Below the pieces are notes generated by a model. It saw only the letters and a list, made by a program, of their open reading frames with translations, searched no databases and was not told the DNA's origin. Position numbers and translations under genes: made by a program. This document shows positions 14,137 through 47,600 of a stretch of DNA of 64,000 nt, one piece after another. The stretch's first letter is position 1; each line of letters begins with the position of its first letter. Location of the stretch: positions 310,001 through 374,000 of IMG/VR virus record IMGVR_UViG_3300035661_000001; one strand, given 5' to 3'.

Positions 14137-16908
14137 ATGGCAAATCAACCTGGAGGCGCTGGTATTTTACCAGGAGTTACGACTGATCTTATCACACAAT
14201 CACGTGGAACATCCATTCCAGGCGGATCGCGTGTTGCAGCCATGATCGGAGAAGGGTCAACAACTGAGACTGTTGTCATACAAGCCGTTGGTAGTGGTGC
14301 TGATGGTCTTAATCCATCTTATAGCTCTACTTCTGGAGCTGATGGTAGACATTTTCAGTTATCAAATGCAAATGTTATTTCTAACAGAACAACTGTTTTT
14401 AAAAATGGTATACCATTAGTAGGATTAGAATCACTTATTGATTCTAATGCATTCAATAATAAATATGATTATAGAGTTGATATCACAACTGGTCGCCTTG
14501 AATTGCAGAGAGCTCATTTAGTTGATCAGGGTGGTGCTTTTTACATTCCTCTTACTACTAACGTTGGATTAGGTACAGTAAATACTTTAACTCTACAAGA
14601 TGCTAATGCTCCGCCAGAAACATGGACTATTAGATGTGTTGGCGTTCAAAGAAATGCATTGAATCAACCTATTGCTGGAACAGCTAAATTTTTAGCTTAC
14701 GGTTCTATTTCTGGTTCTAAATTAGATGCAAATGGAAATCCAATTGTTTGGGTAGCCAACAATAATTTAGTCACTAACGGTATTTTGAGTTTTTCTCTTC
14801 AAGAAACTCAAGTAATGTCAGTTGTTGTTTCTGCATTTAGAGAAGGCGATGCTTTTACAATTAAAATTGCTAGTGGCGTTCTTGTTAGAGACGATTCATT
14901 AACAGCAAATTATATTCCAACCAGTTTCTTGAATGATCCAATTTTAACTCAAGGAATGGGTGATGTAGTTAGAAGACATGGTTTTCCTAGTTTAGATAAT
15001 AATTTATCTTTGGGCGCTCAGTTGGCTTATGCTAATATTGCTCCAAGTTTAATTACTTGTCAGGCTGCACCTCCAATGCCCAGAAGAAGATCATTCATTT
15101 TAGAAGATGCTGTTAATTCTATTTCTGAAAATGTTGATGATTTTATCTTCCCACTTCCATTAGGAGTAACACCTGATTTTAATACTGAAATTCATTTCTT
15201 TGTTAATAACAATTCAACAAATGTAGAGTCACAAATTCTACCTAACAAATTAGAATTCTATTCTTTAGATACTTCTGGATTCCCAACCACTGATCAATTT
15301 GTATTTGATGATACTTCTGCACCAGCTGGATTCTCATACTTCTATACTGTTACTCAAAGTTTAGCTACCATAGCAACTGGAGAAGATGGTTATATTGGTA
15401 GAAATCCATCATTTTTTAATAAAGGTGTTTTTGCTTCTTCAATATCTTTTGATTCTTCTTATGTTGGAAAAACTCTTAAAATTATAGATGCGAATAACGT
15501 TGCTAATATTGGAACGTATGTTGTTGATGCTGTTAGTGGTGGTAAATTGTATGTTACGCATGATGTATTTCCAGATTTCGTTACTGAAAATCCAGTAACA
15601 TTTGAAGTAATTAACGTGGCTACAGGATTACCAATTGCTGGTGGTTCGGGTACAGATGGTGCATTGATTGCGTTAGTGTCAACAACTACAGCAACATTTA
15701 GTAGCGATGTATCTACTGGCGTTGACTTCAGTTTAATTTCTAATATATTGACACGTAGATTACAAATCAATGGTTCAATTGATAACAATGGACTGTATGA
15801 TATCATAGGATATGACAGTTTTACAAACTCTATTACAATACAAAAAGCTCTTGTCAATGAAAATGATATGAGATATGAAATATTGGATTCTTCTGATGTT
15901 AGTAATTATGTTGTTATTAATAAAAACGTTGTTCCAGTTGGTTACGGTTTAAGAGTAACAATAGTTGACACTAAAGAAGCTTCTTTTTATGATGCCGGAT
16001 GGATCAATGCATTAGAATCATTAGAAAAAGTTGAGTGTGATATCTTAGTTCCTCTTCCAAAACAAACTATTTCTGTTATTTTTCAAACATCACTTGCTCA
16101 CTGTAAATCTATGAGTAATATTAGAAACAAAAAAGAAAGAGTTTTGTTTATAGGAGCTATCAATGGTTTGACTCCTGAAAATGTAATTGGAACTCAACCT
16201 GCTGCCGTCGAAAATATTGGTATACTAGAAGGTATTCAAGGCGAAACTATTACTGATGTTTTGGCTGGAAACGTAGAAGATTTGGCAGATTATTCTGTAC
16301 CAAGTGCTTTTGGAAATACTTATAGATGTGTATATTTCTATCCTGATCAAATTGTAGTACAAGCGGGTGCAGACAATGTATTAATTGATGGATTTTATCA
16401 AGCTGCTGCTGCCGCTGGATATGAGTCAGCGGATATCAGAATTGAAAATCCATTAACAAATAAAGTATTAAGTGGTTTTACAATTAACAGAAATAAAACC
16501 TATTCTACTTCTACCTTAGAAAGATTAGCTGCAGCTGGTATTACTACTTTACAGCCAGTTCAAGGTGGAGGCGTAGTTAAATGGGGATTGACAACATCAC
16601 AAAGTGGATTCGTAGAAGAACAAGAAATATCTATCATATTTATTAGAGATAGAGTTGCTAAGACTTTAAGAGCCGGATTTGCTGGATATGTTGGTCAACC
16701 ACAAGATAAAAATACGGGAGCAATCTTAAATACCCGCGCCGTTATTTTGTTAAATTCCCTTGTGTCTCAAGGATTAATAACAAATTATGCAAACTTAAGT
16801 GTTGTTCAAGATGGTGTAGATCCAACACAATGGAATATTTCCGTTAGTGTTCAGCCTGCATACCCACTTAACTTTATCTATATAAAAGTTAGTGTTGGTC
16901 AAATATAA
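14137..16908 (+). CDS. contractile tail sheath protein (with inserted domains)
   Basis: N-terminal PGVTTD motif; C-terminal sheath domain (LAAAGITTL...WGLTT...EISIIFIRDRV...ISVSVQPAYPLNFIYIKVSV); GAGGAG RBS. Confidence 0.9.
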   Translation: MANQPGGAGILPGVTTDLITQSRGTSIPGGSRVAAMIGEGSTTETVVIQAVGSGADGLNPSYSSTSGADGRHFQLSNANVISNRTTVFKNGIPLVGLESLIDSNAFNNKYDYRVDITTGRLELQRAHLVDQGGAFYIPLTTNVGLGTVNTLTLQDANAPPETWTIRCVGVQRNALNQPIAGTAKFLAYGSISGSKLDANGNPIVWVANNNLVTNGILSFSLQETQVMSVVVSAFREGDAFTIKIASGVLVRDDSLTANYIPTSFLNDPILTQGMGDVVRRHGFPSLDNNLSLGAQLAYANIAPSLITCQAAPPMPRRRSFILEDAVNSISENVDDFIFPLPLGVTPDFNTEIHFFVNNNSTNVESQILPNKLEFYSLDTSGFPTTDQFVFDDTSAPAGFSYFYTVTQSLATIATGEDGYIGRNPSFFNKGVFASSISFDSSYVGKTLKIIDANNVANIGTYVVDAVSGGKLYVTHDVFPDFVTENPVTFEVINVATGLPIAGGSGTDGALIALVSTTTATFSSDVSTGVDFSLISNILTRRLQINGSIDNNGLYDIIGYDSFTNSITIQKALVNENDMRYEILDSSDVSNYVVINKNVVPVGYGLRVTIVDTKEASFYDAGWINALESLEKVECDILVPLPKQTISVIFQTSLAHCKSMSNIRNKKERVLFIGAINGLTPENVIGTQPAAVENIGILEGIQGETITDVLAGNVEDLADYSVPSAFGNTYRCVYFYPDQIVVQAGADNVLIDGFYQAAAAAGYESADIRIENPLTNKVLSGFTINRNKTYSTSTLERLAAAGITTLQPVQGGGVVKWGLTTSQSGFVEEQEISIIFIRDRVAKTLRAGFAGYVGQPQDKNTGAILNTRAVILLNSLVSQGLITNYANLSVVQDGVDPTQWNISVSVQPAYPLNFIYIKVSVGQI

Positions 16909-16916
16909 TTGATCAG

Positions 16917-16948
16917 GTATAACCTCTTATATAATTAAGAGGTTATAC
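16917..16948. repeat. 13-bp perfect inverted repeat with TATAAT loop (terminator and/or promoter hairpin)
   Basis: gtataacctctta-tataat-taagaggttatac between sheath and tube genes. Confidence 0.75.
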
Positions 16949-17000
16949 TTAAATTATGCATAAATAAGAATATCAATATCAAATAACTTTTGGAGTATAA

Positions 17001-17699
17001 ATGGCTACCGCACCTAATACCAATTCCACATTAACATTACCTAATGGTGTTAATAAAACCAGTACATCGTTGTCGACCAATATGATTATATTGGTTAATA
17101 ATACAGCTGTGGGCGCTATACAACAAATGGTAATTTCTGAAAAAAGACAGATAAAAATGATAGATGAAGTGGGAAATGATGGTCATATTGATTCTGTTCC
17201 CGTATCATCTACTAATATTACTGGTTCTTGTCAAAGAATTAGATTTGATAGATTAAGAATCACAGAAGCTTTTAGTAGAGGATTTTTACACGCCGCTTCA
17301 CAGGTTTACCCATTTGATATTGTTATTCTTGATAAACAAAAAAGAGATCAAGGCAGTCAAATTTCCACAGTAATTAAAAATGTTTGGATTTCTGGTTTAG
17401 ACTATACTTATGCCGCTAATGATTGGATCATTACTGATACTATGCAGTGGGAAGCAGAAACAATTTTCAGTATTTTAAATGGTGGTTCTTCACCAATTCC
17501 TGGTGGTATGCCTGCTGCTGTTGGTGGTGAAAGAGGAATTCAACACATGGGTGGTGGTCCAAATGGTGTTCTTAATATTGTTAGCGGTGACGGTATTGTT
17601 AATATCGAACAACTTACAGATACTGGTTCTAATGGCAGAAGAGGCTCGCTCGACGCTGCTGGATTGATAGATATTGGATCATCTGGTCTATTATTTTAA
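17001..17699 (+). CDS. tail tube protein
   Basis: Directly follows sheath; AVGAIQQMVISEKR...EVG...PFDIVI...IKNVWISGLDYTY pattern; Gly-rich C-terminal extension. Confidence 0.8.
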   Translation: MATAPNTNSTLTLPNGVNKTSTSLSTNMIILVNNTAVGAIQQMVISEKRQIKMIDEVGNDGHIDSVPVSSTNITGSCQRIRFDRLRITEAFSRGFLHAASQVYPFDIVILDKQKRDQGSQISTVIKNVWISGLDYTYAANDWIITDTMQWEAETIFSILNGGSSPIPGGMPAAVGGERGIQHMGGGPNGVLNIVSGDGIVNIEQLTDTGSNGRRGSLDAAGLIDIGSSGLLF

Positions 17700-32974: not shown

Positions 32975-33406
32975 ATGTCGTTTGATCTAAAAATACAAAA
33001 TAGAAATTTAATATTAGTTAATGGGCAATTAAAAACTGTTGTAGATAGTGAAAAGCTTATTCAAGATGTATTAAAAATTTGTTTAACTACCGCTGGATCT
33101 AATCCATATCAGCCATGGTATGGATCATATTTATCCAGAACTATCATTGGAAATCCAATTTATACTTCCGTTTTGGTTCAGGTTGCCAAATCACAATTAA
33201 ATACAGCGTTAGAAAATCTCAAGAATTTACAAAATGCTCAGACTCAATCTTTTCAAAGGGTTAGTGCAGATGAGCAAATTAATTCTATTTTGGATATATC
33301 TGTAGTAAGAAATCAAATTGATCCAAGACTTTTTGATGTAAGAATTGGTATTTCTAGTAAAGGGTTAAAACCAATAACCACAGAATTTAGTGTATCCACA
33401 ATATAA
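32975..33406 (+). CDS. baseplate wedge protein, gp25/GpW-like
   Basis: DLKI...KLIQDVLKICLTTAGSNPYQPWYGS...EQINSILDISV pattern; precedes the baseplate J-like gene. Confidence 0.8.
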   Translation: MSFDLKIQNRNLILVNGQLKTVVDSEKLIQDVLKICLTTAGSNPYQPWYGSYLSRTIIGNPIYTSVLVQVAKSQLNTALENLKNLQNAQTQSFQRVSADEQINSILDISVVRNQIDPRLFDVRIGISSKGLKPITTEFSVSTI

Positions 33407-33424: not shown

Positions 33425-36400
33425 ATGGTAACCGTTCGTAGTGCTAATGAAATTATACAAAGTTTAGTAGATTTTTTCAGACTTGCCCAGCCTGATTTAG
33501 ATACAAAGCCAGGTACAGTTGCTAGAGATTTGTTTATAGAAGGACCCTCTAGTCAAATATCTCTTTTGTATGACCAAATTGGAAGTATTTCTAATTTACA
33601 ATCCATTCGTTTAGTTGTAGGGTCTGATTTAGATAAATTATCTAAAAATTTTGGTATTGTTAGAAAACAAACGACCCCAGCAACTGGTACTGCTCTTTTA
33701 ACTTTTTCAGCGATTGTAGCACCGATCAATATCAATAAAGGAGATACGGTAATTGCGAATAATGGAATTTCTTATTCAGTAGCCGCCGGAGTAGCTGTAA
33801 TTCCATCTAATTCAAATTTTTATAAATCAGTTGCTAGTAAATTTAGAGACCAATTAGACACTGCGGGCATATCGGATCAATATGCTGTTCAAGTAACATT
33901 AATAGCTTCATCTGCGGGATCTGCTGGTAATATCGGAGCTTATTCTCTTTCTAGAACTACCATACCTGGCGTGTCTAATGTCACAAATGTTAATTCTTTT
34001 AATGGAGGAACTGATCAAGAGGATGATGCTTCATTCAGAAACCGTGTATTAGCGGCTTTTAGTGGATCTAGTGTGGGCACTGCGTTAGGATACCTTAACG
34101 TAGCTATGAGTACAACAGGAGTCTCTGACGCTTATGTTGTAGAGCCTGGTGACCCTCTTATGATTAGAGATGGCACGATAGTTAAAATAAATAGTGATGG
34201 ATCTAGAACTATTGTTTCTGAAGGTTCGGGTGGAAAAGTAGATATTATAGTTTTGGGTAGTAATTTAATTGAAAATAAAAACACTTTTATTTTCAATGAT
34301 AAAAGCAATACTAATGATCCTACTAGCCCTAAAAACGATGTAGTATTAGGTCAAATTATAGGCGATGAAAATAAAACTATCAATAGAAAAAGAATTGATG
34401 ATATCGCAAATGGAACTGTTCCGTCACAGCCAGTATCTGATATTTTAGAAGTGACTGGATCAGAGAGTGGATCAAATTTCTTACCTAAAACTGTTGATGA
34501 ATTTGGTAGAGTATCCGGTAATTATGAATTGATCAAAGATACTGGTGTATACGGTGGAAGTCCATGGGGATTTGATACTTTTCATATTATATCTAATAAA
34601 ATATCATTATTTAATGAAGATGTAATTAAGGGTCAATTTAACGGGCAAGATGCTGTTACGTTTACTGATGTATTAGAAGTGCCGCAGATACAACAGAATA
34701 TTTCAATTACTAATGAAAATAGTATCGTAACTAGTGATCGATCTATTATTCAATTATTACACACTCCTGCAACAAATGTTACGAGAGTATTTAATGTTCA
34801 TACAGGAGAAAGATATATTGTAGTTAATCAAAACTTTGATGTCACTGGTACTTTTAATTCTACTGGTAGAATAAAAATATCTGGAAACACTTTACCTTCC
34901 CCTAGTGATCAATTACAAGTTGATTATAGTTGGATTGTTAATTATGATCAATATTCTGATTATGATGGTTTAGTAAAAACATCTAATATTAGACCTGTTA
35001 CTGATAGCATTGATTGGGGATATGCATCTATTGTTAATAACGAAAAAATAATTTTCGTTAAAGATGTTTCTAATGGATTTTTTACGGGCACTGCTAATCA
35101 TCCTGTTAGTACAGTTTTATCAGCAAAATCTTTTTCTGAAATTACAGGAACAGTAGTTAAAGTTACTTCTGGAATTTTTGTAGATAGATTATCTATTACT
35201 ATTGGTAATTTACCAATTCAAACACAAACAGTTGATAGTATTACGTTTAAAAATAGCAATACTGAATTGTACAATACTCCGCAAGGAAACGGTATTTTTT
35301 CTAATGTCGCTACGATAGTAGGAATTAATGTAGTTTATAACACTGTTATTATATTACCAATAGATACGCCTGCTAAAAATGGAGACATAGTATCTACATT
35401 TATAAATAATATAGAAGTATTTAATGGAACAAATATAAATGGTAGTGCTACAGGAACACAAATTACTATTCCAGCAGAATTATTAACTACATCAGCGAAT
35501 AGTATTGTTTTGAAAGTTAATTATATTTCTAGTATTTCAGATTTATTTTCTGTTGGTACAACAGCATTACCTATCAGTAGAGTAAGTAATGGATTTTTAA
35601 CTAATGCAAGTAATGGTTTTAATAATTTTAGTATAGTTAATCTTTCTAGAAGAGAAAATCAAACTGTTCAAAAAAATACTAGCAATCAATTTTATGTAAA
35701 CTTAAATGCATTCGCAATTGATTTTTCAATATCTCCGTCGCAGGTTTTATCTATAATTAGACTTTCTGACAATTTAGAATTATGGAATTCTGATAATTTA
35801 GGTAGCATTATTGTGGGTAATACTGGTAATTATCAATTAATTTTGAACGGAGTAAATGCTCCTGCAGTAGGAGATAAAATTTTAGTTATCTATTATGTGG
35901 GAGATTTGAGAAAATTTCAACCATTTAGTTTTGCAAACCAAAATATTTCAAATAGAATAGAAATATTACAAACGGATGCTAGTACCGGGAAATTATATAT
36001 TCCTATAAGTGGATTGACAAATCAAACGAACGTACAGTTCTCCATTATAGAACCAAATACTGATATTGTAATATTTTCTGGAACAGATGGAGTTTTAATT
36101 TCAAATTCTTTATCTGCAACATTGAATAGCGTTGCAGTTGATTTCAGTTCTTCAATTGATTTAACAAACAAAAAAATTAAGATTGTTGGAAGTATCAACA
36201 ATGGTACATACGATATTTCATCATATGATGTTAATACAAATACATTAACATTTATCAATAACATTAACAAATTAACAAACGACCAAATATGTGTTATTAG
36301 AATAGCAGACGGCAAAGAAATATGGAATTACAATGGAATAATAGATATTGCTAATAATAAATTATTATTTGCAAACAATAATTTTACTCATGTTAACGAT

Positions 36401-37510
36401 AAAGTATATGTTATTTTGTTCAATTTTCAAAATTTAAGAAAATCTCCTACTAAAATTACAGGCACTATAGTCGATCAAGTAATTAACGCCGGTGTAATTA
36501 CAATTTCTGGAATGACATTATTTAAAATTCAGGATGTAATTTTCACAGCTACTAGTACAGGATTAAAATTGGATATATCTGAAGCTATTAGAAAAGGATT
36601 AGGTTTATCTAGCTCTGTCAGTATACCAAGTAATATAAAATTAGTTAAAGTAATTAAATTAGAAAAAGTAATTACTGTTAGTGCGGGCAGCGATGAAGTA
36701 GCGCAAGTATCAGCATCATATGATACAGAAAATTCAACTATAAAAAATAATCTTTTATATAGTGACGAAATGTTAAGTGATACAGGATTGAATAATTTGG
36801 AATTAATATTACCAAATACTAACAATAACACATTGAATACTAGTATAAAAAATTTACCAACTTTAGGTGATAAATTAAGAATAACCTTTTATTATACGGT
36901 AGATAATGATTCAGAAAATCTTTCTTATTCTAGAAATGGGATATTGTATACTAACAAAAAATTTGCACTTGTAGATAAAGTGTTTATCTCTAGTGGTTTT
37001 AAAACTTCACAGTCTACTAAATTAACAGGAACTTCTTTTACTCAACCAGGATTAGGATCCAGATATAAAGTTTATTACGATTATCTAGCTCCTAAAGCTA
37101 ATGAAAGAATTGTAGTAAGATATAATTATAATAGATTAATTTCAGATGTTACTTTCAGTGTTGAAAATACCAGACCGATAAATGCAGATGTTTTGGTTCG
37201 TGGTGCAAAACAAGTGTTTTTAGATTTGATTTTAAATGTAGTAATAGCAGACGGATTTGCGTCATCACAAAATACTGTTTTACAAAATTTAAGAGATCAA
37301 ATCAATGCCGCAATGACAACTACTAAATTAGGAGATATAGTAGATACTATTGATCTTATCAATGTTGCGCAAGCAGTTGAAGGAATTGCAAGGGCTAGAA
37401 TTGTTTATTTTAACAAAACTGGAAGCCAAGGACAAGTGTTAAAAGTTCAAGCACAACAGGATGAATATTTGACACCAAACGATGTACAGATAAACAAAGA
37501 AACAAGATAA
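33425..37510 (+). CDS. baseplate J-like (gp6/gp47) wedge protein, greatly enlarged
   Basis: DLDKLSKNFGIVRK..PATG, GSAGNIGA...VTN...GGTDQEDDASFRNR, GVSDAYV...GKVDI motifs. Confidence 0.85.
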   Translation: MVTVRSANEIIQSLVDFFRLAQPDLDTKPGTVARDLFIEGPSSQISLLYDQIGSISNLQSIRLVVGSDLDKLSKNFGIVRKQTTPATGTALLTFSAIVAPININKGDTVIANNGISYSVAAGVAVIPSNSNFYKSVASKFRDQLDTAGISDQYAVQVTLIASSAGSAGNIGAYSLSRTTIPGVSNVTNVNSFNGGTDQEDDASFRNRVLAAFSGSSVGTALGYLNVAMSTTGVSDAYVVEPGDPLMIRDGTIVKINSDGSRTIVSEGSGGKVDIIVLGSNLIENKNTFIFNDKSNTNDPTSPKNDVVLGQIIGDENKTINRKRIDDIANGTVPSQPVSDILEVTGSESGSNFLPKTVDEFGRVSGNYELIKDTGVYGGSPWGFDTFHIISNKISLFNEDVIKGQFNGQDAVTFTDVLEVPQIQQNISITNENSIVTSDRSIIQLLHTPATNVTRVFNVHTGERYIVVNQNFDVTGTFNSTGRIKISGNTLPSPSDQLQVDYSWIVNYDQYSDYDGLVKTSNIRPVTDSIDWGYASIVNNEKIIFVKDVSNGFFTGTANHPVSTVLSAKSFSEITGTVVKVTSGIFVDRLSITIGNLPIQTQTVDSITFKNSNTELYNTPQGNGIFSNVATIVGINVVYNTVIILPIDTPAKNGDIVSTFINNIEVFNGTNINGSATGTQITIPAELLTTSANSIVLKVNYISSISDLFSVGTTALPISRVSNGFLTNASNGFNNFSIVNLSRRENQTVQKNTSNQFYVNLNAFAIDFSISPSQVLSIIRLSDNLELWNSDNLGSIIVGNTGNYQLILNGVNAPAVGDKILVIYYVGDLRKFQPFSFANQNISNRIEILQTDASTGKLYIPISGLTNQTNVQFSIIEPNTDIVIFSGTDGVLISNSLSATLNSVAVDFSSSIDLTNKKIKIVGSINNGTYDISSYDVNTNTLTFINNINKLTNDQICVIRIADGKEIWNYNGIIDIANNKLLFANNNFTHVNDKVYVILFNFQNLRKSPTKITGTIVDQVINAGVITISGMTLFKIQDVIFTATSTGLKLDISEAIRKGLGLSSSVSIPSNIKLVKVIKLEKVITVSAGSDEVAQVSASYDTENSTIKNNLLYSDEMLSDTGLNNLELILPNTNNNTLNTSIKNLPTLGDKLRITFYYTVDNDSENLSYSRNGILYTNKKFALVDKVFISSGFKTSQSTKLTGTSFTQPGLGSRYKVYYDYLAPKANERIVVRYNYNRLISDVTFSVENTRPINADVLVRGAKQVFLDLILNVVIADGFASSQNTVLQNLRDQINAAMTTTKLGDIVDTIDLINVAQAVEGIARARIVYFNKTGSQGQVLKVQAQQDEYLTPNDVQINKETR

Positions 37511-37511: not shown

Positions 37512-40500
37512 ATGCAAATTCTTAGAATACTCAGTGTAACTATAAATAATAATTCAAGCATTGATGTTTCATTTACTGAAAATTTAACATCAAATCTTGT
37601 ACCGTCAAATATTTCTATTATTTCTGATACACCTAATGTACCTTCATCTGAAGTATTGTTTATAAGAATAACTGGTAATGTATTAAGTTTTGTATGTCAA
37701 CCTTTAACACCTTTAGCTTCCTATTTTATTAAACTGTCAAATACACCTACTAATCCATTTATTTCATTAAATGGAGATGCTAAAATATCAGAAGATGGCG
37801 TATCAAATATGTATTTGATAACAGGACCATTGTCTTCTGATAATCCAGTTAAAAATTTCTTTTTATCTTATTTTAAAGATAATATTTATGATTTAGAAGA
37901 TTCTAATGGTCTTGTCGCCAAATATATTGATTCTCTTAGTGTATCATTAGCAAGAGCCTTATATGATATAGGTCAAACTAAAAATGAAAATTATCTTAGT
38001 TTTACTGTTACAGATGAGCAAAAAACTAGAGGTCCTGGACCTTTTGATAGATTAAATGAAGAGAGTGCTTATGAAATTTTCAGAGTAGGAAGAGGGGCTA
38101 CTACAGCAAATGCTAGTACGGCATTTGTTATTTCTGATTTTCCAGCATACCCAATTACATTACAGAAACAAGATAATATTGAGGTTGTAAAGCCTAATAC
38201 AATAAATCAATCGGGATATTTTAACATCAATAGTTTGATTTTTAATTTATCAACATTACCTATTACCAAAGTAAATAGCATTGTATTTACACAGTTGACC
38301 GCAAATCCAATCTATGTTTACGATATAGAAAATTTTGGATATCAAATTAAAAATTCTAGATATGATCAAGATTTTGCTTTTGATTATTTAGTATTAGAAG
38401 AAAATCAAATTAAAATAAGCGATAAAATTTTAGAAGACTCCTTATTTTCTTTAGATAATATCTTAAGCGTTGAAGTTAAATATGAATCTAAAGATTTAGG
38501 TAGAGTCGTTGATTCTAATACGGTAATTGTCACTACCGTAAAAAAATCTATAAGAGAAGTTTTACCACCTATTATAAATATTTTTAATTTAAAACATGCG
38601 CCTATTACTGATACATCAGGTATAATTATTAATTTGGGCGGGGTAATATTTACTGATCCAAATACTACGACCGGGCTACAACACCCTGCTTTTATTACTG
38701 AATTGCCTTTCAGATTAAATGGTTTGCCATTTTTGCCAGGGCAATACAGCATAGATTATACAACAGGAAATGTATATGTATATGGTGCGGACTTAACTAA
38801 TGATGGTACGGGGGCATTTCCTCCATTAGCTACTTATAATTATTTATTGACTTACAAGCATAATCAAGATTATACTTATGATCCCGATCTATTGGATGTA
38901 GTTTCTTTGCCTCATGGAAATTTGCGAAATTCTAGTGGTACTGTAAAATTTAATTATGAACAAGTATTGATACCAGGAATAGATTACGTAGCTAACTTAC
39001 ATCAAGAAGTTTTGACAGAAAGAATAAATAATAATTTATTGGCTGCTAATTTGATTAAAACTCAATCATCTCCAATTACAAATGTATATAGAATATACAA
39101 TGAAACTTCTGGAGAAATTTATACTTTAGATAGATGGTCAGATAATAAAATTTATTTTAGATACAATACTCCGCCACGCATAGATCAAAAACTAAATGAA
39201 AGAGTTTCATTCAATACTGTGACAAATGAATTATTATTTGTGAATAGTTCACAGTTGAATAATTCTTTTTTAAATATTGTTAAGATTTTTTTAAATAACA
39301 ACACTATTATTTCTGGAACAGAAGACAGTGTTGCTACTTCTTTTAATACTAGTTTAACATTTTCTGATAATAATATCTTTATCAAAGAAAAATGGTTCAA
39401 TAGACAATTAGATGAATCAATTAATATAGATCGATTGGAATCGATCGGTGAATATATGATTGATTATTTTAATGGTGTTGTATATTGCGTTGTTGTTGAT
39501 CCACAGAATTTTAATATAGGTACAGTATCTTATAAGAATAATACGATTTCTCCACAATTTCCACATTTGATAAGTGTAGATGATTTGTATTATCAAATTA
39601 ATATTTTGGATTCTAAAACTAAAACATTCACATACACTTCTTTTGGTGATGGTTTTGTTATTCCAGAATCTTTAGATTATGCTGATGAATTAACTTTAAA
39701 CAATTCTGATGCGATATACCAAATTCATGATGATCAAATTGGTATATTTATGGATGGTATTTTTATTCCTGGAGTAACGAACCAGATTAAATATGTCAGA
39801 TCATTAATTGAGTATGAAGATTTATTAAACAGTACGAATCCTTTGAATTTCGCATCATTCGTTAATAGTGGGGATTTTGATGTTCAAATTGAGCCAATTA
39901 TCGGTCAGTCTTTTGAAAATGTTCAATTTGATGGAAATTATTATGTAGTTATTAATCAAAATATTCCATATTTATCAAATAATATTACATACGCTTTCAC
40001 TGTAACTCGTGTATCTGATTCTGCCACATTATGGAATGGTTCTGGTACTGTAATTCCTGGTGACGTAGTTAAATTAGTATTGCCAGGTATAAATGCGCCA
40101 AATGAAGGTGATCTAGTGAATGTAACTTTCACTTTCACCATTAATGATTTATCAAGAATAGTGATTGATTATAATAAAGGTGAATATTACATTGATTATG
40201 TTTATGTTGCTGATGAGATAATAGTTAGTTACGAACATGGTGATAATGTTTTGGATTTCAGAAAAAGTAAAAATTTACCTACGGGTTCCGTTTATTACGT
40301 AACTTATAAGGTTGGAGCATTGCGAGATGCTTTATTGAAAAATTTTGGTACGCTCGTAAATATTCCTGAATTAGCAAATTTTGATATTAATTTTGATAGA
40401 GAAAGATACCGAGATGCATTGATTGCTGCTCTTAGTTCTTTTATTCAAGGACCTACAATTACAGCTATTAAAAATATTGGTCAAACCATTTCTCATATTG

Positions 40501-43500
40501 AACCGGAAGTAATTGAATCAGTATTTCAAGAATGGTCATTAGGAAGTAGTTTGTTAAATCCAACATCTATTAAAACAAAAGGTGATTTTCAATTATTACC
40601 AGCCAAATTCGATAATGGTGTATTAATAGATTCCACAAATCAAACAATTAATTTCCCTTTTAACTCAAATATAAGATTAGAAGAAGGGACATTTGAAACA
40701 TGGATTTCATCACAATGGAATGGTTTAGATAATGACGCCCTGTTAACGTTTAATATTTTAAAAGACGGCTATGCTATTGATCCATCAAATGTATTTATAG
40801 GTACGGCTGAGGCTCATCCAGAAATAATTAATGGTTCATTTTCTATTTCTAAATTAACAAATATGATTGGTTCTCCAAATAAAAATAAAGATGGAGTATT
40901 CATTTATTATGATACTGATTTATCAGGAACATATTTAAGATGGTATGTTGAAATAATAGATGGATATGTTAGCCCAATTAGTTCTAATTATAAATTCAAA
41001 ATCACAGCCACTGGCTCATTTTATGATACGAAAAGTATTGTAATTCCTAAACCATCTAATTTAACTATTTTTACTGGAACTAGTACTGTTAATTTCAATA
41101 TCATTGGCGGTGGACAAATAGATGAAGGTATTACATTTGTATCAGATGTTGATCATTACATTTTAGATGTTGGAGAAGATAAAACAAAAAATCGTATTTC
41201 TTTATTCAAAGACATTAGTGGATATTTGAATTTTAGGGTATACGATAAAAATAAAACACCATATACAATTAGTTCTGACGTTTCTAATTGGAAATCTGGC
41301 GATCTACATCATATTGCAGTTTCTTGGAAATTAAATACTAGAAATGGACGTGATGAAATGCATTTATTTGTGGATGGTTTTGAAATACCTAACATTATTA
41401 AATATGGTCAAAAGTTAAGACCATATTTACATGAAAAATTCAGAACAATAAATCCAGAAGAAATTATAGGATCGACTAATATAGATATAGTTTCATCAAC
41501 AGATTTATTAATTACAGCTGGTAATGATACGGTTTCTTCTAGTGTTAATTTTAGTGCTTACAATATTTTCGCCGGAGATACTATTTACATTGATGAATTG
41601 GGTTTTTCGGATTCTGGGTATACTATCATTTCAATAAATGGTCAGAATTTAGTTTTATCTCAATTAATGCCAGTAACATTATCAAATGGAAGATTTTCTG
41701 TAAATAGAACGAAATACGAAGTAGTTTCAGATATTGATGTTTCTCCCAATATTACAGTTTCTACAATTCATGCAATGTTATCTGGTACAGATTTGATTGG
41801 TAATTCTGGAAATGATACTGTCATGTCTCCTAGCATCAATTTTACTAATGATAATATTGTGCAAGGATATCTGTTAAAAATAGATGATACGCTTATTACA
41901 AATATATATACTATTGTCGCAGTAAACGGCAATACATTGACTATCAATGATAATTTACCAACTAGTATCTCTAGTACTACATTTAGAATTTATTCAAATG
42001 TTGAAAATGAATTGCCTGGAGTAAGAGCATTAGAACCAGCATACAGTATATCTAAAGATAATAATTTTAATAATGTCTTAACATTATCTAGCCAGGTGTT
42101 TGCCGGAGATTTAATTCTAATTAAAACGTTAGGTTTAAATCACAGAAAAATAAAACAAAACTATTATGTATGGAGTGATGGTGTAGAAAATATTTTAATG
42201 ACAAATTTGCCACCACCTATTTCATTGGATGAGGCAAATATTACTAGAATAATTACACCAACAACTGTTATCAATTCTTCTAATTCGACTTTATCTGGTG
42301 GAGTATTGCATTCCAATAATTTAGATACCGCTAAGCCATCAAATTCTCAAAATGGCAGAACCATAAGCGTTACTATAAGTGGAACAAATATAGATTTTAC
42401 AATACCAGTCCAAGTAACCATAAATGGAGTAAGTGGAATTAATACTATTAGTGAAACTATCATTTTTAATGATTATGGCACTTTAGATTTCACTAATCTT
42501 TATTTGTCTTTAAATTATGTGAATATAAATGTAAAACCAACAAACACTTCAAAATCAGCATGTACAATAACAGTTAAAGAAAAATATTCTATCACACATG
42601 CGGAAAGCAGTGGATACGCTCCAGTAGTAAAATTCAGCTATCAAATAGGTTATGGATATACTTTATACAATAGCGGTATTAACTCTGTTACTGATGATAG
42701 TAAATTATTTAGCGCACTTGATGTTAATAATTATTTAGTAATTAGTTCGCCAGTACAAGCAGCAGGCTTCTATAAAATTACTAGTGTCTCACAAGATCGT
42801 AAAACATTGTTCATTGATCCGACTAGTGCGGCTCCAGTGTTACCTATACCTTCATTTGATAATGGAGTATATCAAATTTTACAGGTTAATTCATATCGAA
42901 GTGGATTGCAAAATGGCTTCTTCACATTTGAAGTTAATGTATTGCCAAGCCAAGCGTATTATCTTGATAAAGGTTTTTACGAATTAGAGTATTTTACCTA
43001 TACTAGAATTGGATTAGACCCAATTAATAATCAAGTATTTTTGGGCAGTGATTATACTGGGCACTTACAATTACATGGATTAATCGATCAAGTTAAAATT
43101 TACTCGACTATGTTGACAGACACTAGAATTGGCGAAAGTATTCCTGAAAATCAGCGTTCAATCACTAAGGATTTCAATTCATTAAAATCCTTATCATCAG
43201 ATGCAACGACATTAATGTTAATAGATTTTAATACTTTTCCTTTTAAGAATGTTGCGGATTTTTATGTTTCACCAAGTCCCATAAAAAAACATTTCTATTC
43301 TTCATTAGTTGTAAATGAAAATTTTGGAAATAGTCTGGTAATGTTGGAAGAACCATTAATTATTTCAAATGATGGTGTTTTGAATACTAGAAAAGAAGGT
43401 ACATTAGAATTTTGGGTTAATCCATTGTTTGATACTTGTAATGATCCTCATAAAAGATTTTATTTTGATGCTTACGGCGCAATAACAGAAGAAATAGTTA

Positions 43501-44642
43501 GCGTTAATAATGTGTCATTGAAATTATCTAGTCCTGCATCACAAATATTAAGTGTAAAGATCAAGAATGGTGATTCAAAATTAGATTATTTTGCTGGTGG
43601 TAAAATAGAAATAGATACTCAAAATGCTATTCAAGAACAAAAAAATAGTATAGGTAATAGTGCCGTGTTAGTTTCCAAACCAATATTACAAGTCATAACT
43701 ATAAAAATTATTGGGGATCTTACTGATACTGATTATTTTGCAAATGGTGCTATTAGTTCTGATATGCAAATTATTTATCTTGGAAAGATTTTACCAAGTA
43801 GTAATTTGCCATTATTAATAACATATCAAACTGCAGAGAATGAAAACAAAATTATTAATACTCAAATAATAAGATTGAATAAAAAACTTCCTTACCAAAA
43901 ATCTCATGTTGTAGTTAATTATATTCCTAAAGGTTTACAAGGAGATCGTATTGCAATTTTTAAAGATGAAATAGGTTATTTAAATTTTGCAATTACTGCT
44001 TCTGGAAAAGATTACGTTATAGGCGCACCAACCTATTGGGCTAGAGATACATGGCATAAAGTGAAAGCTAGTTTCATTATCAACAGTGGTATTAATAAAG
44101 ATGAAATGAGATTGTTTATTGATGGCTATATATATAATAATGTTGTTTTTGGTTCTGATTTGATTGCTGGAACTTTGCCCGCTATAACAGGATCGGTAAC
44201 CATTGGTGATGGCTATGGTAGTTTGGGAAGCATAAAATTTAAAGACTCAATTAATGAAGTGTTCATTGGAGCACAATACGATAAACAATATCCAATATTT
44301 AGTTTGTTAGATAATTTCAGAATTAGCAGTGTCTCAAGACCTATTTATGCACCATACGGTGAGCCTTTAGATGTAGGATACAGTTCCAATTTAGACATGG
44401 TCTTTCCAGTAACAGAAGATTTGTACACCACCTATCTATTAAATTCTGATGCAATTTCATTTATAAATGATGATTTTGCCACCATCAGGAATAGACGATC
44501 TGGTTTATTTGATTTTTCTGTTAATATAATAGATAGTCTCGGTATAGTAAATAGTAGCATAAAATCCAAAGAAGCCTTAGAAAAATTGATTAAAGTCCTT
44601 AAGCCGGCTAATTCCAGGGCATTTATTCAATATATTAAATGA
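37512..44642 (+). CDS. giant baseplate wedge protein with LamG/concanavalin-like domains
   Basis: 2376 aa; LKNFG...RERYRDAL...GPT wedge motif, LamG-like EGTFETW/HHIAVSW/LFVDG and EGTLEFW/WHKVKASF/LFIDG, C-terminal LKPANSR as in GpI-like proteins. Confidence 0.65.
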   Translation: MQILRILSVTINNNSSIDVSFTENLTSNLVPSNISIISDTPNVPSSEVLFIRITGNVLSFVCQPLTPLASYFIKLSNTPTNPFISLNGDAKISEDGVSNMYLITGPLSSDNPVKNFFLSYFKDNIYDLEDSNGLVAKYIDSLSVSLARALYDIGQTKNENYLSFTVTDEQKTRGPGPFDRLNEESAYEIFRVGRGATTANASTAFVISDFPAYPITLQKQDNIEVVKPNTINQSGYFNINSLIFNLSTLPITKVNSIVFTQLTANPIYVYDIENFGYQIKNSRYDQDFAFDYLVLEENQIKISDKILEDSLFSLDNILSVEVKYESKDLGRVVDSNTVIVTTVKKSIREVLPPIINIFNLKHAPITDTSGIIINLGGVIFTDPNTTTGLQHPAFITELPFRLNGLPFLPGQYSIDYTTGNVYVYGADLTNDGTGAFPPLATYNYLLTYKHNQDYTYDPDLLDVVSLPHGNLRNSSGTVKFNYEQVLIPGIDYVANLHQEVLTERINNNLLAANLIKTQSSPITNVYRIYNETSGEIYTLDRWSDNKIYFRYNTPPRIDQKLNERVSFNTVTNELLFVNSSQLNNSFLNIVKIFLNNNTIISGTEDSVATSFNTSLTFSDNNIFIKEKWFNRQLDESINIDRLESIGEYMIDYFNGVVYCVVVDPQNFNIGTVSYKNNTISPQFPHLISVDDLYYQINILDSKTKTFTYTSFGDGFVIPESLDYADELTLNNSDAIYQIHDDQIGIFMDGIFIPGVTNQIKYVRSLIEYEDLLNSTNPLNFASFVNSGDFDVQIEPIIGQSFENVQFDGNYYVVINQNIPYLSNNITYAFTVTRVSDSATLWNGSGTVIPGDVVKLVLPGINAPNEGDLVNVTFTFTINDLSRIVIDYNKGEYYIDYVYVADEIIVSYEHGDNVLDFRKSKNLPTGSVYYVTYKVGALRDALLKNFGTLVNIPELANFDINFDRERYRDALIAALSSFIQGPTITAIKNIGQTISHIEPEVIESVFQEWSLGSSLLNPTSIKTKGDFQLLPAKFDNGVLIDSTNQTINFPFNSNIRLEEGTFETWISSQWNGLDNDALLTFNILKDGYAIDPSNVFIGTAEAHPEIINGSFSISKLTNMIGSPNKNKDGVFIYYDTDLSGTYLRWYVEIIDGYVSPISSNYKFKITATGSFYDTKSIVIPKPSNLTIFTGTSTVNFNIIGGGQIDEGITFVSDVDHYILDVGEDKTKNRISLFKDISGYLNFRVYDKNKTPYTISSDVSNWKSGDLHHIAVSWKLNTRNGRDEMHLFVDGFEIPNIIKYGQKLRPYLHEKFRTINPEEIIGSTNIDIVSSTDLLITAGNDTVSSSVNFSAYNIFAGDTIYIDELGFSDSGYTIISINGQNLVLSQLMPVTLSNGRFSVNRTKYEVVSDIDVSPNITVSTIHAMLSGTDLIGNSGNDTVMSPSINFTNDNIVQGYLLKIDDTLITNIYTIVAVNGNTLTINDNLPTSISSTTFRIYSNVENELPGVRALEPAYSISKDNNFNNVLTLSSQVFAGDLILIKTLGLNHRKIKQNYYVWSDGVENILMTNLPPPISLDEANITRIITPTTVINSSNSTLSGGVLHSNNLDTAKPSNSQNGRTISVTISGTNIDFTIPVQVTINGVSGINTISETIIFNDYGTLDFTNLYLSLNYVNINVKPTNTSKSACTITVKEKYSITHAESSGYAPVVKFSYQIGYGYTLYNSGINSVTDDSKLFSALDVNNYLVISSPVQAAGFYKITSVSQDRKTLFIDPTSAAPVLPIPSFDNGVYQILQVNSYRSGLQNGFFTFEVNVLPSQAYYLDKGFYELEYFTYTRIGLDPINNQVFLGSDYTGHLQLHGLIDQVKIYSTMLTDTRIGESIPENQRSITKDFNSLKSLSSDATTLMLIDFNTFPFKNVADFYVSPSPIKKHFYSSLVVNENFGNSLVMLEEPLIISNDGVLNTRKEGTLEFWVNPLFDTCNDPHKRFYFDAYGAITEEIVSVNNVSLKLSSPASQILSVKIKNGDSKLDYFAGGKIEIDTQNAIQEQKNSIGNSAVLVSKPILQVITIKIIGDLTDTDYFANGAISSDMQIIYLGKILPSSNLPLLITYQTAENENKIINTQIIRLNKKLPYQKSHVVVNYIPKGLQGDRIAIFKDEIGYLNFAITASGKDYVIGAPTYWARDTWHKVKASFIINSGINKDEMRLFIDGYIYNNVVFGSDLIAGTLPAITGSVTIGDGYGSLGSIKFKDSINEVFIGAQYDKQYPIFSLLDNFRISSVSRPIYAPYGEPLDVGYSSNLDMVFPVTEDLYTTYLLNSDAISFINDDFATIRNRRSGLFDFSVNIIDSLGIVNSSIKSKEALEKLIKVLKPANSRAFIQYIK

Positions 44643-44649
44643 GAACAAA

Positions 44650-47600
44650 ATGACAAAAAGAAGCCCTATTTCTGCTCAACAAAATATATGGTTTGATGCT
44701 CAACAAGTAGATAATACTGACTTGACATTGGAACAAGATTTTAACAATACTATAAATTCTGCAGTAATTGGTAATCATATAGGTTCAGGAACCTTGCCTG
44801 AAGTACTAGAACAGATTGTTCTATTTGACTCTTCTCTAGCCTCTGGTTTTTTGGATGGCACAATTGTACAAATCCAAAATCAACCTTCAGATAATAATTT
44901 AGGTAATCAATTAGAAATAGAATTAACCGGTTCTAATGTCGCAGGAAAAAAAGCAATTAAATTTTGCGTAATTGGGTTAGACTTTCAAAGTAATTTAATT
45001 TATGAAACTTTCTATTTCAGAACAAATGAAATACAAGTTACTCGTCAACATTTTGCTCAAATTTTATTATTGTTATTCAATGATTTTATTGGAGATTCTA
45101 CTCTTTCTCTTAATTTGGTAGGCAAATTAATAGTTAGAGAGGCTAGACCTTTAACTATTTCTAGAGATCCAATTATGGTCTCTCAGGCGGTAGAGCCTAA
45201 TTTATTTTTCAGAGATTTTTATGTTGCTGGATTTAGTTCATTATTAAGTTTATTACAAACAGCTTTACCATTATACAATATCGATACTCTTAATATTTAT
45301 ACTGCTCCACTAGATAATAAAATTTTAGGAGTTGGAGACGTTACTACTCAAATTGGACAAAAATTTGTTACAAAAACTAGTAATATTCAAAAGGTCACAT
45401 TATTATTATCAGTACAAAATACAGAAGTAGGTAATGAAGATGATTTAGCCTGGAATGGTGATATCGTTGTTAGTTTGTATCCATTACAATCAACTATAGA
45501 ATGTATTTCTGATATCGCTCCTAATTCTCCTATAGACTTTTCTCCTTCAAACATACCTTTAGCGCAATTAAGTTTTAATTACAACACTTTACAAGCTTCA
45601 GGAACAGTTTTAGATACGGTCCCTCAACCAGTTGATTTTATTTTTAGCAATGGTTCAGTTGCTAATGGAAACCAATTAGTTATTGGTAATTATTATACAG
45701 TTACTATTAAGAGATCGGGCTCAGCTGATAAATGTGATATTTTAATAGCAGCAGGTTCAAATCATACTTTCAATTCAAGAATAACTACATTCACCGGAAC
45801 GTTGTGGATAGATATTCCTGAACAAGATTTGTGGTTTAAAATATGGACAGATGCCGCAAAAGTTTCAGATGGTCAAGTATACGAAAATGGTTATGGAAGC
45901 ATTCTTCCAAAAATCATCGAAGATTCTGACACGCTTGCCACAGTTGATTATTCATTTGGTAATATTCAATTTAAAGGTAACGATATATACAGGGCGGTTG
46001 TCGCAGCAATCACGGAAGAAACTACACCAATTCCTGATCAAAGAACTGGTAATCCAGTTCTTTCTAGACAACAATTTATTCCAAAAATAAATTTATTAAA
46101 TACGATTGACTTAACGAATTTAGAAAAAGCTTCTGATCCATTAATTATTGGTGCTATCTCTGATAAAAATATCAAGTTTTTTGATTCATTATCAGCAGTA
46201 ATTAATTCAAAATTGTATAGCGCCACTATAGTACACGATGAATTAATTGTTAAAATAGTAGATGATTCTACTGATACTGTTAGATTTGATAGCTCTGTCT
46301 CTGGTTTGATCTCTAGTCTTTTGAATGGAGATTTTGTTGGAGCTAAAATTTTTCCAAATGCTGGCGCTATTAATATCTATTATAGAATAGCTTCCTCAAA
46401 ATTAATATCTTGTATACTTGGAGATGTAAATGGAGATGGAATTATAGATGAAAAGGATTTGGAATTATTAAATAGTTATATTGATTATGATTTAAATGTT
46501 GGCTTACCAGTTGATACTGTAGTTGTTACTGATGGTACTACCACCACATTTACCAATAGTTATAATACATATACAAACAATTTTAGTAATTTATTCGGAA
46601 TCACTTTTCAAGTTGTAAATTCAATTACTAATGCGGTAATTGCTTCAGGTACTGATGGCGTATTGGTCGCTCATCCCACAAATAATAGATTAGCTCAATT
46701 TACAAGTTCTAGTATAATATTTGGAGATATTGTTGGATTAGGAAGTCATAAATTAGTATTGATAACACCTAGTAATCAAGAAAATTACGGTGGGTTTGAT
46801 ATCGTATCAATTGATACGTTGACAGATGTATTGACTATTAGAAAAGTGATTTTAACAGGCGATGTAATTATGCAAATGTTAAGATCTGATATTGATGGTG
46901 ATTTTCATGTTACTAATAATGATGGATATTTGTTATCAAATTATATTGAAAAAGCAGTATTATCATCATCTCTTACTAGCACATATCCTGGACCAACAAC
47001 TAATCCATTTACCAAAATCGGAACCAAATTTAATACTATCAGATTTAAATTAGAACAATTTACAGATCGAGCAGATGATTATGCGACAGATCCAAATGAT
47101 AGAGTAAATGTAGTACATCCTTCTCCTGATATCTTTCTGTCGGATGGATATTTTGAAAATCATGATTTTTATACAAGTCCATCTGTTTTATCTTTCCAAA
47201 AACAACTGACATGGGATGAATCTTTAATTGTAACTAATAGTCGCCCACGATTTGTGCCATGTGTGTTCCCAACTCTTTCGGGATTCATGGAAAATAAATG
47301 TTCTATTGAAGGAGTAAATGTTAATATTTACGAATCTAAACCGGATTTTGATTCGGGTAGAGTAGATGTATTTGTTCCTGATAATTTGATTATTGGCAGA
47401 GGTGGGGAAATACATAGACCAGATGGTAATTTTTATAAAGTAGATTTTGAAGTTGGTACTATTGTATTAGAGATTCCTGACGGAATATTTGGAGCAGAAC
47501 GTACCATAAATGTTTTAGATGATTTTATTGCAGATTATACCGGAGATGGTAGAACTCGTTTAGGATTCCCTTCAATGAAATTTGCTGACTGTTCACTAGT

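What the first reader, a model, noticed from the sequence alone, without database searches (positions are those of the whole stretch)
15598..46850. One ~80-aa beta-module (F.I.N..T...I.SGTDG) reused across sheath and baseplate proteins
Seen in three proteins: sheath TFEVINVATGLPIAGGSGTDGAL...INGSIDNNGLYDIIGYDSFTNSITI (~15600-15840); baseplate J VQFSIIEPNTDIVIFSGTDGVL...IVGSINNGTYDISSYDVNTNTLTF (~36030-36250); and the 44650 protein ITFQVVNSITNAVIASGTDGVL...NYGGFDIVSIDTLTDVLTI (~46600-46840). Weaker copies occur in the sheath (ATGEDG...IGTYVV) and twice in the 2376-aa wedge (SSTD/SGTD, ~41490-41950). Inference: a decoration or adhesion domain shuffled into several tail proteins, which would coat the tail at high copy number and explain part of their oversize.
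Basis: seen in the sequence. Interest (0 to 1): 0.6.

Follow-up and report, generated by a model that had tools for sequence, protein, structure and literature searches.

The report
Reused beta-barrel domain in phage tail
A roughly 90-residue beta-barrel domain really is reused in the sheath (twice), a baseplate protein and a fibre-like protein of a 452-kb phage; it belongs to a wider, uncatalogued family of add-on domains of phage tail proteins, and its function is untested.

Summary
The three segments sit at the stated coordinates and align far above chance (Smith-Waterman z 10-13 against shuffles).

- **Sheath:** the weaker copy is a genuine tandem duplicate, so each sheath subunit carries two modules.
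- **Wedge:** the two segments are distant members. HHalign gives 86% probability, and the predicted six-strand barrels share 17 of their top 50 fold matches with the sheath model.
- **Genome:** the whole 452-kb phage genome holds only these copies.

AlphaFold2 predicts each module as a small closed beta-barrel (pLDDT 89). No solved structure stands out (best Z 7.3-8.5), and Pfam and NCBIfam give no hit.

A profile search of 1.84 billion proteins finds 198 matches. They include T4-like sheaths with three tandem modules in the place where gp18 has its exposed domains.

The copies are ancient paralogues, not recently shuffled. They cluster by protein class, share no DNA similarity, and four relatives keep the 2+1+1 layout (one record, a fragment, lacks the fibre-like-protein copy).

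Surface exposure is supported indirectly:
- The modules are the fastest-evolving part of the sheath.
- Two relatives carry a whole ice-binding-like domain nested inside sheath module copy 2.

Adhesion is plausible but untested. The modules explain only a minor part of the proteins' extra size. This is a new member of a known kind, accessory decoration domains.

The parts
14137..16908 (+). Tail sheath gene (P0001, 923 aa)
   Evidence: PF17482 at residues 831-920 (E 1.8e-6); phrog_2839 tail sheath (3.8e-14).
15310..15570 (+). Sheath module copy 1 (P0001 392-478), the diverged tandem copy
   Evidence: Detected by the three-copy seed HMM in divergent orthologues. Forms the first barrel in the AF2 model, with pLDDT above 90 from model residue 30. 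Forms its own clade in the tree.
15580..15861 (+).
   Evidence: Second barrel of the AF2 model.
33425..37510 (+). Baseplate J-like gene (P0002, 1361 aa)
   Evidence: PF04865 at 1.1e-22; phrog_6 at 1.4e-33.
36011..36274 (+). Baseplate J module (P0002 863-950)
   Evidence: The structure search in BFVD finds the orthologue's module.
37512..44642 (+). 2376-aa wedge-like gene (P0004) with a Laminin_G_3 domain
   Evidence: PF13385 at residues 1224-1294. 169 orthologues at E 1e-3 or better, the 120 listed mostly about 2380 aa.
41481..41708 (+). Wedge barrel 1 (P0004 1324-1399), a remote family member
   Evidence: AF2 six-strand domain with pLDDT above 88. HMM score 8.9 bits. Weak match to phrog_1236.
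41766..41999 (+). Wedge barrel 2 (P0004 1419-1496), a remote family member
   Evidence: HHalign 86.1% (E 5e-6) against A5 and 59.6% against A3. AF2 domain with pLDDT above 90.
42630..42830 (+). Possible third wedge barrel (P0004 about 1707-1773), unconfirmed
   Evidence: Best sub-threshold HMM hit in the genome at 14.9 bits, against a best decoy of 9.0-9.9. Not folded.
44650..48189 (+). 1179-aa fibre-like protein with a dockerin-like motif (P0003)
   Evidence: PF00404. The orthologue is named a dockerin domain-containing protein in BFVD.
46579..46860 (+). P0003 module (residues 644-737)
   Evidence: Forms its own clade in the tree with SH-aLRT 97.
46420..46485 (+). First dockerin-like calcium-loop repeat (P0003 591-612), upstream of the module
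   Evidence: Dockerin_1 profile positions 2-23.
46888..46947 (+). Second dockerin-like repeat (P0003 747-766), downstream of the module
   Evidence: Dockerin_1 profile positions 12-56 match nt 46819-46947. The motif is conserved in orthologues.

Best explanation
**Shown.** The module is an autonomously folding, all-beta domain of about 90 residues, predicted as a small closed barrel of six core strands. It belongs to an uncatalogued domain family that recurs, often in several copies, in tail sheath, baseplate and fibre-like proteins of many uncultured phages.

In this clade of freshwater-type phages of about 450 kb it occurs as:
- four old paralogous copies: two in tandem in the sheath, one in baseplate J, and one between the two halves of a dockerin-like motif in the protein that starts at 44650;
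- at least two much more diverged copies in the 2376-aa wedge protein.

**Inferred.** The barrels sit in surface loops of the host proteins and point away from the tail axis. They would then decorate the tail with twelve sheath copies per hexameric ring, plus copies on the baseplate. This rests on four observations:
- In a T4-like sheath the modules occupy the place of the exposed gp18 domains I and II.
- They evolve faster than the sheath core.
- They tolerate a nested 190-residue domain.
- They are inserted within another small domain, which requires their two ends to lie close together.

**Inferred more weakly.** Their job is low-affinity, multivalent contact with cell-surface or environmental polymers. 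This would be analogous to the Ig-like and beta-barrel accessory domains of other phages, with no part in sheath contraction itself.
For: **Homology and significance:**

**Fold**
- AF2 model of sheath 384-584: pLDDT 89.1, pTM 0.77, two beta domains.
- AF2 model of wedge 1295-1500: two six-strand domains.
- A structure search of viral models (BFVD) with the sheath model returns only three hits at E 1e-3 or better. They are a tail sheath (2.8e-18), a baseplate J-like protein (3e-6) and a dockerin-domain protein (2.6e-5) from a related uncultured phage.

**Family breadth**
- 198 of 1.84 billion representative proteins match at E 1e-3 or better, many with 2-7 copies.
- The broad-family profile against the clade profile gives HHalign 98.5%, E 1.6e-15.
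- P0220 and P0321 are phrog_23 sheaths with three tandem modules. In P0220 the modules lie between Gp18_domIII_N and the C-terminal core.
- P0216 lies in a baseplate gene cluster of another phage.

**Age of the copies**
- The tree groups copies by protein class.
- There is no DNA similarity between copies.
- Four relatives keep the 2+1+1 layout; one of these records, a fragment, lacks the fibre-like-protein copy.

**Exposure**
- The modules are the least conserved sheath segments: 55-58% mean pairwise identity, against 66-75% elsewhere.
- A complete Ice_binding domain is nested inside copy 2 in P0055 and P0057.
- In P0003 the module splits a dockerin-like motif.
- T4 gp18 domain I, the outermost sheath domain, is a six-stranded beta-barrel (PMC8570332).
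Against: - No binding was tested.
- The positions conserved across the family (G-x-D-G, F-T-S, N-N-G, alternating hydrophobic residues) look like turns and core, not a ligand site.
- Fold matches to solved structures are at background level (Z 7.3-8.5). They point to a common small-barrel arrangement, not to a family of known function.
- The orientation of the modules in the assembled tail was not modelled.
- The window's sheath has no sequence match to any solved sheath, so 'outward-facing' rests on analogy.
- I could not superpose my two models directly, because no coordinates are available.
Confidence: 0.6

Rival explanations
1. Structural role only. The barrels make lateral contacts between neighbouring sheath subunits and baseplate wedges, and so stiffen the long tail of a very large phage. 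No external ligand is involved.
For: Family-wide conservation is dominated by fold determinants. The same module sits in proteins that are neighbours in the assembled tail: sheath, baseplate J, wedge and a fibre-like protein. The 2+1+1 layout is strictly conserved.
Against: The modules are the least constrained part of the sheath. They tolerate a 190-residue nested insertion, which is hard to reconcile with a tight lattice contact. T4-like sheaths vary in copy number: three in P0220 against none in T4 itself.
Confidence: 0.25
2. Common docking site. The same module in sheath, baseplate J and the dockerin-bearing protein is the attachment point for one shared accessory partner that runs along the tail, such as a fibre or an outer coil.
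For: The same module occurs in three different tail proteins. Phage G has an outer coil along its sheath (PMC8570332). P0003 combines the module with a dockerin-like motif.
Against: No partner was identified. The genome has no cohesin. The paralogues have diverged to 29-39% identity, so a single shared partner is not obviously maintained. No complex was modelled.
Confidence: 0.08
3. Recent intragenomic shuffling or gene conversion spread one cassette among the tail genes. This is the literal reading of 'shuffled'.
For: The shared SGTDG and NNG-YDI motifs look striking in the raw sequence.
Against: Amino-acid identity is 29-39%. No DNA match reaches E below 0.1. Copies cluster by protein class across genomes. 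Divergent relatives keep the same layout.
Confidence: 0.03
4. Chance or compositional similarity in AT-rich, Asn/Ser/Thr-rich tail proteins.
For: The genome is 30% GC and the proteins are rich in N, S, T and I.
Against: z = 10-13 against composition-preserving shuffles. HMM E-values are 1e-38 to 1e-42. The structure search recovers the same three protein classes.
Confidence: 0.01

Closest known systems
T4 gp18 sheath domain I, the outermost domain of the T4 tail sheath
   Same: A six-stranded beta-barrel of about 90 residues, inserted between the N-terminal and C-terminal parts of the sheath core and exposed on the tail surface (PMC8570332). In the T4-like sheath P0220 the modules occupy exactly this insertion point.
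   Different: No sequence relationship: HHalign probability 0.15%. gp18 is absent from the top 50 structure matches. Here the barrel is tandemly repeated and also occurs in baseplate and fibre-like proteins.
Accessory beta-barrel domains of phage proteins with solved structures: the endosialidase beta-barrel (PF12195; 4hiz_A 255-338), lambda gpJ 490-563 (8iyk_J), the Solidus tailspike C-terminal barrel (24qj_A), the Mystique tail-tube insertion (9n71_B 103-183) and the P22/CUS-3 coat I-domain
   Same: Small closed barrels added onto structural proteins of the virion. They are the recurring fold matches of both models (Z 5.3-8.5).
   Different: The Z values are at the background level for this search. 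No Pfam match for the window's copies, and only a 0.049 hit to PF12195 in one family member. Membership is not shown.
E1 FCCH-type beta-barrel (PF16190), annotated in some phage proteins
   Same: Both models match the FCCH barrel of ubiquitin-activating enzyme: 9mc4_A 215-296 at Z 5.6 and 6.2, 4p22_B at Z 6.1, 2v31 at Z 5.4. Atlas and BFVD neighbours include phage proteins that carry this label.
   Different: No hit to the Pfam model even at E up to 10. The Atlas scores of 0.83 are below the level that counts as more than a lead.
Ig-like decoration domains of phage structural proteins (Big_2, I-set, FN3; T4 Hoc)
   Same: The same evolutionary pattern, as I know it from the literature and did not test here: small beta domains added to sheath, tail tube, baseplate and head proteins, dispensable for assembly, and proposed to give weak adhesion to surfaces.
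   Different: A different fold (closed barrel, not an Ig sandwich) and a different sequence family. No Ig-family Pfam hit.

Membership tests
Unnamed tail-protein beta-barrel module family (profiles A3 and A5 built here) | Significant match to the family profile (G-x-D-G ... F-T-S ... F ... hydrophobic strand ... N-N-G-x-[YF]-x-I) | tested here: met
   The four close copies score 1e-15 to 1e-30. A5 against A3 gives 98.5%, E 1.6e-15.
Unnamed tail-protein beta-barrel module family (profiles A3 and A5 built here) | The same match for the two wedge segments | tested here: inconclusive
   HHalign 86.1% (E 5e-6) for barrel 2. Single-sequence scores of 8.9-14.9 bits barely exceed the decoys. The predicted fold agrees.
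Unnamed tail-protein beta-barrel module family (profiles A3 and A5 built here) | Autonomous all-beta domain of about six core strands | tested here: met
   AF2 models at pLDDT 89.1 and at above 90 within the domains.
T4 gp18 domain I | Sequence homology to gp18 residues 98-188 | tested here: not met
   HHalign probability 0.15% against gp18 85-350.
T4 gp18 domain I | Insertion between Gp18_domIII_N and the C-terminal sheath core | tested here: met
   Met in family member P0220, where the modules at 95-335 lie between PF22671 (27-81) and the gp18-like 473-734. In the window's sheath the modules lie between the N terminus and the core at 688-920.
T4 gp18 domain I | Structural superposition with gp18 domain I | tested here: inconclusive
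   gp18 is not among the top 50 VIA-align matches. No direct superposition was possible.
Endosialidase beta-barrel (PF12195) | Match to the Pfam model | tested here: not met
   No hit for the window's copies at E up to 10. Only 0.049 in P0235.
Endosialidase beta-barrel (PF12195) | Fold similarity to 4hiz_A 255-338 | tested here: inconclusive
   Z 6.3 for the sheath model and 5.3 for the wedge model, within the background range.
E1_FCCH (PF16190) | Match to the Pfam model | tested here: not met
   Not listed at E up to 10. Fold Z 5.4-6.2 only.
Ig-like phage decoration domains | Ig or FN3 sandwich fold, or a Pfam Ig-family match | tested here: not met
   No Ig-family hit. The models match barrel folds instead.
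Type I dockerin (flanks of the P0003 module) | Two calcium-loop plus helix repeats matching PF00404 | tested here: met
   Repeat 1 at residues 591-612 and repeat 2 within 724-766. The score is 28.2 bits on the fragment against a cut-off of 22.9. The motif pair is conserved in orthologues.
Type I dockerin (flanks of the P0003 module) | Repeats joined by a short linker; a cohesin partner exists | tested here: not met
   The repeats are about 135 residues apart, with the module between them. No cohesin in the phage genome. A host cohesin cannot be tested.

The most novel reading that the evidence does not exclude
The module defines a widespread, still unnamed domain family that phages use to coat contractile tails and baseplates with hundreds of weak ligand-binding sites. 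It would be a tail counterpart of the Ig-like head decorations. Its loops would serve as a platform for further nested domains, such as the ice-binding-like domain in relatives.
Probability: 0.25. Interest if true: 0.5.

Novelty: new member of a known kind. Interest (0 to 1): 0.35.

Why it matters
- **Annotation.** It gives a name and boundaries to a recurrent domain that current libraries (Pfam, NCBIfam) miss. That would improve annotation of the very large, mostly unannotated tail proteins of huge phages.
- **Biology.** If the barrels bind surface polymers, tails as well as heads would take part in reversible adhesion.
- **Engineering.** The nested ice-binding-like domain in relatives marks a loop of sheath module copy 2 as a natural display site, which is relevant to phage engineering.

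The general idea, accessory domains decorating virion proteins, is well established. This adds to a known theme and is not a new principle.

Tried and rejected
**Searches that found nothing**
- Foldseek against the PDB: nothing at E 1e-3 or better.
- PDB sequence search with the module profile: only chance-level hits, E 0.38 or worse.
- The window's sheath has no sequence match to any solved chain.
- Pfam at E up to 10, PHROGs at E up to 1 and NCBIfam found no family for the window's modules.
- ESM Atlas searches gave TM below 0.5 and feature scores of 0.90 or lower, so they are leads only.
- Cohesin (PF00963) is absent from the phage genome.

**Ideas rejected**
- Homology to T4 gp18 domains I-II.
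- Recent duplication: no DNA-level similarity between copies.
- A fourth weak genomic hit at G000:C1:6079-6186 (E 0.057) was not reproduced by the deeper profiles and was dropped.

**Limits of the analysis**
- The careful tree search did not finish in time. The tree used is the quick one, with SH-aLRT support only and many open forks.

- Complex prediction: I make no claim that particular proteins bind each other.
- The read-laying tools.
- Table 11 was the only genetic code used.
Full report
**Setting**

The window is positions 310001-374000 of a 451,956-bp virus record with direct terminal repeats. GC content is about 30%.

The region of the finding is a contractile-tail and baseplate gene cluster, all on the + strand:
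- a sheath gene at 14137-16908 (P0001, 923 aa; PF17482, phrog_2839)
- a tape-measure-like gene at 18832-20937
- a sheath-initiator (gp25-like) gene at 32975-33406
- a baseplate J-like gene at 33425-37510 (P0002, 1361 aa; PF04865 at 1.1e-22)
- a 2376-aa wedge-like gene at 37512-44642 (P0004; Laminin_G_3)
- a 1179-aa gene at 44650-48189 (P0003; dockerin-like motif)

**Checking the observation**

Pairwise local alignment scores are 89-116, against 30-33 ± 6 for composition-preserving shuffles. That gives z = 10.4-13.5, and none of 2000 shuffles reached the observed score.

An HMM built from the three segments finds them again at 1e-38 to 1e-42 and finds nothing else significant in the window. The same holds for the whole genome.

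No DNA-level similarity links the copies.

**The weaker sheath copy**

The seed HMM contains no sheath copy-1 sequence. It still detects the upstream segment in register in many orthologues, and significantly in the most divergent ones: L038 at 1.1e-5, L037 at 6e-4, L040 at 1.2e-3, P0058 at 1.1e-3. After iteration the segment joins the family. So each sheath subunit has two tandem modules, at P0001 392-478 and 482-575.

**The wedge segments**

With profiles built without any wedge sequence, the wedge gives 14.9, 12.2 and 8.9 bits. The best of about 800 decoys in the window gives 9.9, and the best of about 1900 genome decoys gives 9.0. These three are the best sub-threshold real hits in the genome, and all lie in one ORF that holds under 1% of the six-frame residues.

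Profile-profile comparison of a 26-orthologue wedge alignment gives 59.6% (E 8.9e-5) against the clade profile and 86.1% (E 5e-6) against a profile of the broader family.

AlphaFold2 folds P0004 1295-1500 into two domains, at 1324-1399 and 1419-1496, with pLDDT mostly above 90. Each has six strands, in the same order of motifs as the sheath module.

I take them as remote members of the family, with about 80% confidence. A possible third barrel at about 1707-1773 was not folded.

**Fold**

An alignment of 48 sheath orthologues gave a confident model of P0001 384-584: pLDDT 89.1, pTM 0.77. It shows two all-beta domains.

- Foldseek finds nothing in the PDB at E 1e-3 or better.
- An exhaustive VIA-align search gives a best Z of 7.3 for the sheath model and 8.5 for the wedge model. 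The tool's own notes place these values in the usual background range.
- The matches are small closed beta-barrels, many of them accessory or connector domains of phage virions. Examples are the Solidus tailspike C-terminal barrel, lambda gpJ 490-563, the phi92 endosialidase barrel, the tail-tube insertion of phage Mystique and the P22/CUS-3 I-domain. Cellular barrels also appear: E1 FCCH and the FAD-binding domains of ferredoxin reductases.
- 17 of the top 50 entries are shared by the two lists, and the ones I checked match at the same chain ranges. This supports a common fold class for the sheath and wedge barrels.
- Searching predicted viral structures (BFVD) with the sheath model gives only three hits at E 1e-3 or better. 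They are a tail sheath protein (2.8e-18), a baseplate J-like protein (3e-6) and a dockerin domain-containing protein (2.6e-5) of an uncultured Caudovirales phage. This is an independent, structure-based recovery of the same three protein classes.

**Distribution**

- All 54 sheath relatives found by word search keep the module.
- A profile search of 1.84 billion representative proteins finds 198 proteins at E 1e-3 or better and 43 at E 1e-10 or better.
- Besides orthologues of the three proteins, many hits are proteins of 800-1500 aa with two to seven copies and no Pfam family.
- A profile of these copies matches the clade profile at 98.5%, E 1.6e-15.
- P0220 and P0321 are ordinary phrog_23 sheaths, and P0220 matches T4 gp18. 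In P0220, residues 21-81 align with gp18 22-83 and residues 473-734 with gp18 388-655. Three tandem modules fill the space between, where gp18 has its exposed domains I and II.
- The P0220 modules also match parts of PHROG families labelled tail fiber, major tail and head protein.
- P0216 lies next to gp5-like and gp25-like genes in a 110-kb phage contig.
- A few bacterial giant proteins also match.
- Pfam, NCBIfam and the PDB sequence set hold no model of the family.

**History of the copies**

In a tree of 154 non-redundant copies, sheath copy 1, sheath copy 2 and the P0003-type copies each group across genomes (SH-aLRT 88, 82 and 97). The baseplate J copies sit unresolved near the base. No copy groups with a paralogue from its own genome. 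This is a quick tree with many open forks.

Four related records were searched, among them one whose sheath module is only 34% identical to the window's. Three of them show two sheath copies, one baseplate J copy and one copy in the P0003-like protein; the fourth is a fragment in which the P0003-like copy was not found.

The duplications therefore predate the clade. Recent shuffling is rejected.

**Evidence on exposure**

1. The conserved sheath parts are the N terminus and residues 688-920. The modules lie in the large insertion between them. In T4 the inserted domains are the exposed ones, and domain I, the outermost, is a six-stranded barrel (PMC8570332).
2. Among 49 orthologues the two modules are the least conserved segments: 55% and 58% mean pairwise identity, against 66-75% elsewhere. 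The minimum is at residues 511-540.
3. In two relatives (P0055, P0057) a complete Ice_binding domain (PF11999, profile 1-208) is inserted at this variable stretch of copy 2. It lies between profile positions 48 and 49, and both halves of the module are retained.
4. In P0003 the module, with short linkers, lies between the two calcium-loop repeats of a dockerin-like motif. These repeats are normally a few residues apart. The arrangement is conserved in orthologues. A domain inserted this way must have its two ends close together.

None of this is a direct observation of the assembled tail.

**Function**

- Shown: a modular, fast-evolving, insertion-tolerant barrel at high copy number in tail proteins.
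- Inferred: it decorates the outer surface.
- Weakly inferred: it provides multivalent, low-affinity adhesion. This rests on analogy with Ig-like decorations and with barrel domains of tailspikes, and is my own knowledge, not tested here.
- Against a specific binding site: the family-wide conserved positions are glycine, aspartate and asparagine turns and alternating hydrophobic residues.
- The main rival is a purely structural role in lateral contacts.

**Size argument**

The two sheath modules account for about 180 of the roughly 560 residues outside the conserved sheath parts. The single baseplate J module accounts for about 90 of the roughly 1000 residues beyond a typical 360-380-aa baseplate J protein. 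The modules explain only a minor part of the oversize.

**Verdict**

- This is a previously uncatalogued sequence family within the well-known class of accessory decoration domains of phage virions.

Noticed in passing
window 46420-46947 (P0003 residues 591-766): A dockerin-like motif is split in two. Repeat 1 is at residues 591-612 and repeat 2 at 747-766, with the beta-barrel module inserted between them. The arrangement is conserved in orthologues. The phage genome has no cohesin.
   Followed up: partly
relatives P0055 (residues 566-753), P0057 (558-744) and P0075 (best-scoring stretch 1858-2044): Some related phages carry complete ice-binding-like (PF11999) domains nested inside sheath module copy 2. 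The wedge orthologue P0075 (2832 aa) has two matched stretches of the family. A sheath that displays such a domain at high copy number is unusual.
   Followed up: partly
window 42630-42830 (P0004 about 1707-1773): A possible third barrel in the wedge protein. It is the best sub-threshold hit in the genome (14.9 bits) but was not folded or tested with an orthologue profile.
   Followed up: no
window 41181-41393 (P0004 residues 1224-1294): A Laminin_G_3 (concanavalin-like lectin) domain lies just upstream of the wedge barrels (E 1.7e-10). It is a second candidate carbohydrate-binding element in the same protein.
   Followed up: no
window 18832-20937 and 32975-33406: A tape-measure-like protein (PF20155, weak) and a sheath-initiator, gp25-like protein (PF10934). 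Together with the sheath and baseplate J they fix the region as a contractile-tail and baseplate cluster. Most other large ORFs there have no family.
   Followed up: partly
L005, L041, L046 (IMGVR_UViG_3300035182_002596, 349 kb): A second public record holds a sheath module 100% identical to the window's, and the same three-protein layout. It is probably the same phage or a very close one.
   Followed up: no
P0203/P0328 (about 7187 aa, Gemmataceae MAG, named a DUF4214 protein) and P0233/P0332 (Peribacteraceae MAG): Module-like repeats also occur in giant bacterial proteins and as five or more tight tandem repeats of about 65-70 residues. The family is therefore not strictly viral, or these are prophage or mis-binned sequences.
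   Followed up: no
G000:C1:6079-6186 (outside the window): A weak match to the three-copy profile (E 0.057) in a 152-aa frame. The deeper profiles did not reproduce it.
   Followed up: partly
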